In this document: positions 2,832 to 2,990 of the stretch, one piece after another
Layout of the letters: each line of letters opens with the position of its first letter
Numbering within the stretch: the first letter of the stretch is position 1
From: Selaginella moellendorffii
Lineage: Eukaryota; Plantae; Lycopodiophyta
Direction: 5' to 3'
Assembly: GCF_000143415.4 (NCBI RefSeq)
Contig: NW_003314725.1
Coordinates: forward strand, 1-5,501
Length of the DNA stretch: 5,501 nt
Notes under the pieces: model-generated
Database searches by the model: none
The model's input: only the letters and a program-made list of their open reading frames with translations
Told to the model about the DNA's origin: nothing
Program-made: the position numbers and the translations under genes

Positions 2832-2841
2832 AAAAAAAAAA
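2832..2841 (-). terminator. RNA Pol III oligo(dT) terminator of the 5S gene
   Basis: A run of 10 A on + (T10 on -) sits directly at the 5S 3' end. Confidence 0.88.
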
Positions 2842-2959
2842 GAGGGGGTCACTTGGACTTCCCGGGTGGTCACCCAGCCCAGTACTATTCGAGCCCAGGG
2901 ACGCTTAACTTTGGAGGTCTAATGGGATCCAGTGCCATAGTCACGGTTTGAACCCACTC
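2841..2959 (-). rRNA. 5S rRNA gene (divergent variant), co-oriented with the 26S inside the IGS
   Basis: The 119-nt minus-strand sequence GAGTGGGTTCAAACCGTGACTATGGCACTGGATCCCATTAGACCTCCAAAGTTAAGCGTCCCTGGGCTCGAATAGTACTGGGCTGGGTGACCACCCGGGAAGTCCAAGTGACCCCCTCT aligns without gaps to plant 5S as I recall it. Conserved blocks are GGATCCCAT, A-box AGTTAAGCG, TAGTACT, TGGGTGACC and GGGAAGTCC. All five helices can be drawn. Confidence 0.92.
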
Positions 2960-2984
2960 TGAAATATTTCACACTCCCCCTACT

Positions 2985-2990
2985 CTTATA
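2985..2990 (-). promoter_or_regulatory. TATA-like element upstream of the 5S gene (about -31 to -26)
   Basis: TATAAG on the minus strand, at the roughly -30 position where plant 5S genes carry a TATA motif. Confidence 0.65.

What the first reader, a model, noticed from the sequence alone, without database searches (positions are those of the whole stretch)
2832..2990. Highly divergent yet structurally compensated 5S gene embedded in the 35S spacer
Seen: the gene is full length and ungapped, with TATA, A-box and T10 terminator. By eye it is only about 70-75% identical to the angiosperm 5S sequence I recall, which is low for plant 5S. Many changes are paired. Helix I is rewritten as GAGTGGGTT/GACCCCCTC instead of GGATGCG../..TGCA(T/C)CC. 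Helix II has G16-C62 and G18-C60, helix III T29-A48, helix V T68-A107 and helix IV T84-A93. Three mismatches remain (T4.C115, T17.C61, C69.A106). Inference: covariation argues for selection on RNA structure rather than random pseudogene decay. This is either a fast-evolving lineage's main 5S or a second, specialised 5S class (5S-like Pol III RNA) carried in the rDNA unit.
Basis: partly seen in the sequence, partly recalled or inferred. Interest (0 to 1): 0.8.

Follow-up and report, generated by a model that had tools for sequence, protein, structure and literature searches.

The report
Spikemoss 5S rRNA gene in spacer
This is a complete 5S ribosomal RNA gene lying about 2 kb behind the large rRNA gene in the ribosomal DNA spacer of a spikemoss; its sequence is unusually changed for a land plant but its folding is kept, so it is most likely the plant's ordinary working 5S gene and not a new kind of RNA.

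Summary
On the minus strand, 2959->2841 is a full-length 5S rRNA gene (Rfam RF00001, 89.2 bits, threshold 38). It has a TATA-like box at -31..-24 and a T10 terminator. It lies 2,059 bp downstream of, and on the same strand as, the 3' end of the large-subunit rRNA.

It is only 64-75% identical, without gaps, to 14 intact 5S genes from metagenome contigs: 13 of land-plant type (69-75%) and one outlier, L115 (64%). Those genes score 106-116 bits.

The divergence is compensated. 34 of 38 helix pairs are standard, and 7-8 pairs changed on both sides yet still pair. Random substitution of the same amount leaves about 24 pairs (P = 2e-5). Three mismatches remain, and the fold is the weakest of the set.

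Best reading (0.8): this is the ordinary functional 5S gene of a linked ("L-type") rDNA unit. That arrangement is already described for lycophytes, and Selaginellaceae rRNA genes are known to vary strongly. A second, specialised 5S class is not excluded but nothing here supports it.

The scan made the same finding on another piece of this genome (s1-392278). Interest is low to moderate.

The parts
2842..2959 (-). 5S rRNA coding region. RNA position 1 is window 2959. The RNA is 118 nt plus 1-3 U taken from the terminator run.
   Evidence: Rfam RF00001, 89.2 bits, model 1-120, not truncated. 34 of 38 helix pairs are standard.
2832..2841 (-). Run of ten T directly after the gene: an RNA polymerase III terminator.
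   Evidence: Read directly from the sequence. Intact plant 5S genes in the metagenome loci end in T4-T9 runs at or within about 15 bases after the gene end.
2983..2990 (-). TATA-like upstream element TATAAGAG at -31..-24.
   Evidence: Read directly. In 40 intact plant 5S genes, TATA starts cluster at -28..-25. Its function is inferred from Arabidopsis promoter work that I recall from memory, not tested here.
2974..2980 (-). G-rich block GGGGGAG at -21..-15, following TATAAGAG-TA.
   Evidence: Read directly. A similar GAAGAG-GGGGGAG lies at -28..-17 upstream of the 5S genes of loci L002, L048, L071 and L103. Its meaning is unknown.
2863..2910 (-). Internal control region. Box A is +50..+64 (2896-2910), the intermediate element is +67..+72 (2888-2893), and box C is +80..+97 (2863-2880).
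   Evidence: Matches to the plant consensus: box A 13 of 15, intermediate element 3 of 6, box C 14 of 18. The box positions come from established work on Xenopus and Arabidopsis 5S promoters (my own knowledge). Binding was not tested.
5019..5501 (-). 3' end of the large-subunit (25S/26S) rRNA gene; it runs off the window.
   Evidence: Rfam RF02543, 357.9 bits, model 2925-3401.
2960..5018 (-). Spacer between the large rRNA gene and the 5S gene (2,059 bp). It includes seven 68-bp subrepeats at 3102-3582.
1..2831 (-). Spacer downstream of the 5S gene. It holds an AT-rich unique stretch (2600-2830) and then three subrepeat arrays (2345-2566, 1659-2317, 1253-1619). No 18S gene lies in the window.
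   Evidence: Window 20-1308 is 99.5% identical to a contig of an independent sequencing run (L121).

Best explanation
This is the ordinary, functional 5S rRNA gene of a spikemoss. Earlier notes of this scan name the genome Selaginella moellendorffii. The gene is carried once per rDNA unit in the spacer behind the large rRNA gene, on the same strand (linked or L-type arrangement).

Inferred mechanism, not shown here: RNA polymerase III transcribes it from its own signals. These are an upstream TATA-like box, the internal box A, intermediate element and box C bound by TFIIIA, and a T10 terminator. The RNA would then enter the large ribosomal subunit.

Its sequence has drifted far from other land plants. 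Selection has kept the three-armed fold by paired changes in the helices, and the loops that contact proteins and rRNA are nearly unchanged.
For: Shown here:
- The Rfam 5S match is complete and well above threshold (89.2 against 38 bits).
- A T10 run follows directly after the gene, and there is a TATA-like box at -31..-24. Intact plant 5S genes carry theirs in the same region.
- The large-subunit rRNA 3' end lies 2,059 bp upstream on the same strand.
- There are 31 differences from the plant consensus, yet 34 of 38 pairs are standard. Pairs 2-117, 6-113, 8-111, 18-60, 29-48, 68-107 and 80-96 changed on both sides and still pair, and so does 16-62 in RNAalifold's register.
- Random substitution gives 23.8 +/- 2.5 pairs, with P(>=34) = 2e-5. 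Keeping the same positions but drawing random bases gives P = 0.002.
- Decayed copies with 18-30 differences keep only 20-28 pairs.
- On the 15-sequence alignment, 95.9% of cells pair. None of 500 shuffles and no slid register comes near that.
- The blocks 30-38, 50-59, 73-79, 84-92 and 97-105 are identical to the plant consensus.

From papers:
- The linked arrangement is reported for lycophytes (PMC3692318 citing Wicke et al. 2011).
- In bryophytes and gymnosperms the linked 5S is likewise embedded in repetitive spacer DNA (same paper).
- Within Selaginellaceae even 5.8S has 38% parsimony-informative sites (PMC10772194 Table 1).

Lead, not independent evidence: another window of the same genome gave the same kind of gene (s1-392278).
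Against:
- Only one copy was seen, and the rest of the genome could not be searched for a canonical-type 5S.
- Three helix mismatches remain. The energy on the 5S model (-18.8 kcal/mol) is the weakest of 15 sequences, the others being -21 to -36.
- The Rfam score is 17-27 bits below the other intact 5S genes.
- The gene alone deviates at eight positions that are otherwise constant in the set: 6, 12, 29, 39, 43, 48, 113 and 115.
- The intermediate element matches the consensus at only 3 of 6 positions.
- The species name rests on earlier notes that I did not verify.
Confidence: 0.8

Rival explanations
1. It is a second, specialised 5S class or 5S-like Pol III RNA carried in the rDNA unit, while a canonical 5S encoded elsewhere serves the bulk of ribosomes.
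For: - The sequence is far from other land plants (69-75% identity).
- It has a lower Rfam score and the weakest fold of the set.
- It changes positions that are constant in all other sequences compared.
Against: - In linked-arrangement plants the spacer copy is taken to be the 5S gene (PMC3692318).
- Word look-ups in the scan's notes on this genome turned up 5S-derived retroelements, spacer fragments and a TFIIIA intron mimic, but no separate canonical array. This is a weak argument: the notes are leads, and only eight findings are shown per look-up.
- The functional loops are conserved as expected for a ribosomal 5S.
Confidence: 0.07
2. It is a decaying or silenced copy (pseudogene) in one rDNA unit, or in an orphan rDNA fragment.
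For: - Three helix mismatches and a weak fold.
- Duplicated 5S pseudogenes do occur in linked units of Ephedra (PMC3692318).
Against: - Pair retention is far above random and far above real decayed copies.
- There are no insertions or deletions relative to the plant-type 5S genes.
- The terminator and TATA-like box are intact.
- The adjacent large rRNA end is intact.
- An independent run holds the same spacer at 99.5% identity.
Confidence: 0.06
3. It is a 5S-derived mobile element (a Cassandra-type LTR or a 5S SINE) that landed in the spacer.
For: - Earlier notes report abundant Cassandra-like elements in this genome.
- In Asteraceae, linked 5S insertions carry retroelement signatures (PMC3692318).
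Against: - The whole 119-nt gene is present, including both strands of helix I. Cassandra LTRs share only a core of about 70 bp around the internal promoter (PMC10853983).
- No flanking direct repeats other than the spacer subrepeats were found.
- The gene has its own TATA-like box and terminator.
Confidence: 0.02

Closest known systems
Linked (L-type) 35S-5S rDNA units of early land plants: Marchantia, Funaria, lycophytes, some ferns (Sone et al. 1999; Capesius 1997; Wicke et al. 2011, all as cited in PMC3692318).
   Same: There is a single 5S gene in the spacer downstream of the large rRNA gene, surrounded by subrepeats and carrying its own Pol III signals. Metagenome locus L011, which is bryophyte-like, shows the same layout with a 350-bp gap.
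   Different: The gap here is about 2.1 kb. The 5S sequence is much further from the land-plant consensus: 31 differences, against 7-12 for the bryophyte-like sequences.
Linked units of the gymnosperms Ginkgo, Podocarpus and Ephedra (PMC3692318).
   Same: The 5S lies about 2 kb behind the 26S gene in repetitive spacer DNA. Ginkgo also has the direct orientation.
   Different: The Ginkgo 5S is reported as identical to its sequenced 5S RNA. Ephedra carries extra pseudogene copies. Here there is one copy in the part of the spacer seen and no RNA evidence.
Linked units of Artemisia and other Asteraceae (PMC3095306, PMC13688046).
   Same: The 5S is embedded in the 26S-18S spacer.
   Different: In angiosperms the 5S is on the opposite strand, within 1 kb of the 26S gene, in non-repetitive DNA, and often carries Cassandra-like flanks (PMC3692318). 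None of that applies here.
Ordinary plant 5S rRNA genes in separate tandem arrays (S-type).
   Same: Same length, same fold, same conserved loops, and the same TATA-like box and T-run terminator.
   Different: Identity is 69-75%. Eight positions that are constant elsewhere are changed. The Rfam score is lower (89 against 106-116 bits). The gene lies inside the rDNA unit.

Membership tests
5S rRNA (Rfam RF00001) | Covariance-model score above the curated gathering score over the full model. | tested here: met
   89.2 bits against 38, model positions 1-120, not truncated.
5S rRNA (Rfam RF00001) | Length of about 120 nt with five helices around a three-way junction. | tested here: met
   119 nt with no gaps against 14 intact 5S genes. 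34 of 38 pairs are standard. Mismatches are at 4.115, 17.61 and 69.106.
5S rRNA (Rfam RF00001) | Conserved loop C, loop E and loop D sequences. | tested here: met
   Blocks 30-38, 50-59, 73-79, 84-92 and 97-105 are identical to the plant consensus. Lone deviations lie at 12, 39 and 43.
5S rRNA gene (Pol III type 1 promoter) | Internal box A, intermediate element and box C recognised by TFIIIA. | tested here: inconclusive
   Sequence matches are 13 of 15, 3 of 6 and 14 of 18 against the plant consensus. Binding and transcription were not tested.
5S rRNA gene (Pol III type 1 promoter) | A run of T as terminator directly after the gene. | tested here: met
   T10 at 2841->2832.
5S rRNA gene | The transcript is made and incorporated into the large ribosomal subunit. 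| not testable with these tools
L-type (linked) rDNA arrangement | The 5S gene lies inside the 26S-18S intergenic spacer of the 35S unit. | tested here: met
   The large-subunit rRNA 3' end is 2,059 bp upstream on the same strand. The 18S end of the spacer lies outside the window.
L-type (linked) rDNA arrangement | The arrangement is that of the bulk of tandem rDNA units, not of one odd copy. | not tested
Only one unit is in the window. An independent run has the same spacer (L121, 99.5%). Both are hints only.
Cassandra-type 5S-bearing LTR element | The 5S similarity is limited to the internal promoter core and sits inside paired LTRs. | tested here: not met
   The 5S is full length, including helix I. 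No flanking LTR-like direct repeats were found.

The most novel reading that the evidence does not exclude
The rDNA-linked gene is a distinct, structurally retuned 5S class: weaker helices, and changes at positions constant in other land plants (6, 12, 29, 39, 43, 48, 113, 115). It would coexist with a canonical 5S elsewhere in the genome and serve a specialised pool of ribosomes or a non-ribosomal role.
Probability: 0.06. Interest if true: 0.6.

Novelty: new member of a known kind. Interest (0 to 1): 0.25.

Why it matters
If the best reading is right, this is a clear example of compensatory evolution in one of the most conserved RNAs. A vascular plant's 5S is nearly as far from the land-plant consensus (30 differences in positions 1-118) as the outlier 5S of locus L115, which sits in a dense tRNA cluster (37 differences). 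It still keeps its fold.

That makes spikemoss a useful natural test case for co-evolution of 5S rRNA with TFIIIA and the ribosomal proteins uL18 and uL5. It would also help show how 5S-derived elements in the same genome track the host gene: the TFIIIA intron mimic and the Cassandra-like LTRs reported in other windows.

It does not change what is known about rDNA organisation, since the linked arrangement in lycophytes is already published.

Tried and rejected
- Exact core pattern of this 5S in metagenome contigs: 0 hits. Same pattern in bacterial and archaeal genome contigs: 0 hits. The general plant pattern in viral contigs: 0 hits. So no copies from sister species were found.
- The general plant pattern in metagenomes gave 120 loci of ordinary plant 5S. 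I used these as the comparison set. Their taxa are unknown, and the pattern biases the set toward sequences conserved at positions 30-58.
- I tried to reach other copies through spurious reading frames. Ten ATG frames were looked up exactly. Only two, at window 55-790, exist in the collection, on one 1,290-bp contig of run SRR23513768. That contig matches window 20-1308 at 99.5% but does not reach the 5S.
- A word search with the frame next to the 5S found nothing.
- A word search with a frame in the large rRNA end found only distant plants at 69% or less.
- A single-sequence minimum-energy fold does not reproduce the 5S shape and is no better than shuffles (z = 0.66). This was uninformative here: the minimum-energy fold lies well below the 5S-model energy for every one of the 15 sequences compared, so I relied on the family model instead.
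- The many microRNA-like Rfam hits at 1686-2305 are artefacts of the palindromic 16-bp repeat and are all far below their thresholds.
- No tRNA genes were found.
- The Wicke et al. 2011 paper is not held, so I rely on how PMC3692318 cites it.

Full report
WHAT IS THERE

Rfam finds two rRNA features in the window, both on the minus strand.
- The last 477 model positions of the eukaryotic large-subunit rRNA lie at 5501->5019 (357.9 bits).
- One complete 5S rRNA lies at 2959->2841. It covers model positions 1-120 and scores 89.2 bits against a gathering score of 38 (E 7e-19).

The 5S gene therefore sits 2,059 bp downstream of the large rRNA gene on the same strand, inside the intergenic spacer. 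No tRNA genes are present. No second 5S-like stretch is present either.

Reading the strand directly shows the following.
- TATAAGAG lies at -31..-24.
- A block GGGGGAG lies at -21..-15.
- An AT-rich stretch lies at -10..-3.
- Ten T run from the last base of the Rfam match (2841->2832).

Among 40 intact plant 5S genes recovered from metagenome contigs, TATA motifs cluster at -28..-25, and T runs lie at or within about 15 bases after the gene end. The outer signals therefore look like those of an ordinary plant 5S gene. One difference is that the base at -1 is A here, whereas it is C, T or G in all 40. C is at -2, so the true start could be one base upstream. This cannot be settled without mapping the RNA ends.

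HOW DIVERGENT IT IS

I had no reference sequences from a curated source. I therefore scanned metagenome contigs for a degenerate 5S core pattern and extracted 102 distinct 5S copies.
- Intact copies score 106-116 bits in Rfam. The window gene scores 89.2.
- The window gene aligns without gaps to 14 intact genes. Identity is 82-89 of 118 (69-75%) to the 13 land-plant-type genes and 75 of 118 (64%) to L115.
- Identity to the majority consensus of the set is 88 of 119 (74%), which is 31 differences.
- Bryophyte-like members of the set differ from the same consensus at only 7-12 positions.
- The only more distant intact sequence is L115, with 37 differences. It lies in a dense tRNA cluster and is probably not a land plant.

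Two caveats apply: the taxa of the comparison set are unknown, and the search pattern forces identity at 26 of the 29 positions 30-58.

WHETHER THE DIVERGENCE IS COMPENSATED

I used the standard five-helix model with 38 pairs. The consensus forms 36 standard pairs and the window gene forms 34.
- Seven pairs changed on both sides and still pair: 2-117, 6-113, 8-111, 18-60, 29-48, 68-107 and 80-96.
- RNAalifold's register adds an eighth, 16-62 (A-U to G-C).
- Three one-sided changes improve or keep a pair: 7-112, 72-103 and 84-93.
- Three pairs are broken: U4.C115, U17.C61 and C69.A106.
- Two further non-standard pairs marked by Rfam (21.57 and 71.104) are shared with ordinary plant 5S.

Three controls support the compensation.
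- Random placement of 31 substitutions on the consensus leaves 23.8 +/- 2.5 pairs. It reaches 34 in 2 of 100,000 trials. Keeping the observed positions but drawing random bases gives P = 0.002.
- Visibly decayed 5S copies in the metagenome loci serve as an empirical control. Those with 18-30 differences keep only 20-28 pairs.
- On the 15-sequence alignment, 95.9% of cells pair. No shuffle of 500 and no slid register (39-46%) comes close.

The changes avoid the blocks 30-38, 50-59, 73-79, 84-92 and 97-105, which carry loops C, E and D. This is the pattern of a working RNA under structural selection, not of a decaying copy.

POINTS THAT CUT THE OTHER WAY

- The energy of the gene on the 5S model is -18.8 kcal/mol, the weakest of the 15. 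The others range from -21 to -36.
- The gene alone deviates at eight positions that are otherwise constant in the set: 6, 12, 29, 39, 43, 48, 113 and 115.
- The intermediate promoter element matches the consensus at only 3 of 6 positions.

These points fit a lineage whose 5S-binding proteins have co-evolved. They also leave some room for a specialised or relaxed copy.

ORGANISM AND CONTEXT

Earlier notes of this scan call the genome a spikemoss, Selaginella moellendorffii. I did not verify this. What I can say from my own results is limited.
- The 5S loop and helix IV sequences are of the plant type.
- A plant-type telomere motif occurs in the spacer.
- A contig from an independent sequencing run (SRR23513768) matches window 20-1308 at 99.5%.

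The linked arrangement of 5S and 35S genes is described as ancestral for land plants. It is reported for liverworts, mosses, hornworts, lycophytes and ferns (Wicke et al. 2011, as cited in PMC3692318). The same paper notes that in bryophytes and gymnosperms the linked 5S lies in highly repetitive spacer DNA. That is the case here, with subrepeat arrays on both sides.

Selaginellaceae rRNA genes are known to vary strongly. Within the family, 5.8S has 38% parsimony-informative sites, 18S has 24% and 26S has 24% (PMC10772194 Table 1). [quoted passage not shown] A strongly diverged 5S fits that background.

For the one pair I could compare, the window against bryophyte-like L011, the large rRNA 3' end is 85% identical. 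The 5S of the same pair is 73% identical.

VERDICT

The best explanation, at 0.8, is the ordinary functional 5S gene of a linked rDNA unit in a fast-evolving lineage.

Rivals:
- a second specialised class (0.07);
- a decaying copy (0.06);
- a 5S-bearing mobile element (0.02). This last one is contradicted by the full-length gene and the lack of LTR-like flanks (PMC10853983).

The scan reached the same verdict for the same kind of gene on another piece of this genome (s1-392278). That is a repeat, not independent support.

WHAT COULD NOT BE DONE

Transcripts, RNA ends and copy depth were therefore not examined.
- No tool let me search the rest of this genome or other Selaginella species by DNA.
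- Attempts through reading-frame look-ups failed to reach another 5S copy.
- Exact-pattern scans of metagenome, viral and prokaryote contigs were blank.
- The primary paper on lycophyte rDNA arrangement is not held.

Noticed in passing
window 1093-1133 (+): A short plant-type telomere-like tract lies inside the rDNA spacer: two perfect TTTAGGG units at 1105-1118, flanked by degenerate TAGGG and TTTAGGG-like units. Two perfect hits alone are not beyond chance (30 of 200 shuffles), but they are in tandem and sit within a longer degenerate run.
   Followed up: partly
window 1659-2317: About 40 head-to-tail copies of a 16-bp near-palindrome (GGCCCCGGACATGTCC) carry 48-bp and 209-bp higher-order periods. 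They form long hairpins on either strand and produce many sub-threshold microRNA-like Rfam hits.
   Followed up: partly
window 1133-1649, 2633-2640 and 3627-3634: The palindrome CCACGTGG (G-box core CACGTG) occurs 9 times against 0.23 expected. Most copies lie inside the 84/127-bp subrepeats at 1253-1619. Further CACGTG cores lie in the 64-bp repeats at 2345-2566. This could be a binding-site array in the spacer.
   Followed up: no
window 3102-3582: Seven copies of a 68-bp subrepeat (134-bp higher order) lie between the large rRNA gene and the 5S gene. Each carries GTTTTGGGCCCCAAAA. Their position would suit Pol I termination ahead of the Pol III gene. This was not tested.
   Followed up: no
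window 679-712 vs 4633-4666; 4605-4652 vs 4851-4898: A motif of about 34-48 bp (…GGGAGACA.GCGCTTTGGGCTTTCACCCC…) recurs just behind the large rRNA gene, in two copies, and again about 2.2 kb beyond the 5S gene (91-92% identity). This is shared spacer sequence on both sides of the 5S gene.
   Followed up: no
window 2974-2990 (-) and loci L002, L048, L071, L103: The upstream block TATAAGAG-TA-GGGGGAG of this 5S gene resembles GAAGAG-GGGGGAG at nearly the same distance upstream of the 5S genes of one group of metagenome plant contigs. It also recalls the TATA...GGGGG shape of plant Pol I start sites (my own knowledge). A similar TATAGTAGGG lies at 652->643 on the minus strand.
   Followed up: no
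locus L115 (2,229 bp metagenome contig): An intact 5S gene (115.6 bits) differs from the plant consensus at 37 positions, with 12 compensated pairs. It is packed among 16 tRNA genes in 2.2 kb. The organism is unknown.
   Followed up: no
window 2600-2830: A unique AT-rich stretch (32% G+C in a spacer of 52-73%) lies directly downstream of the 5S terminator. It begins with a 7-bp inverted repeat, CTTACAA…TTGTAAG, at 2829->2805.
   Followed up: no
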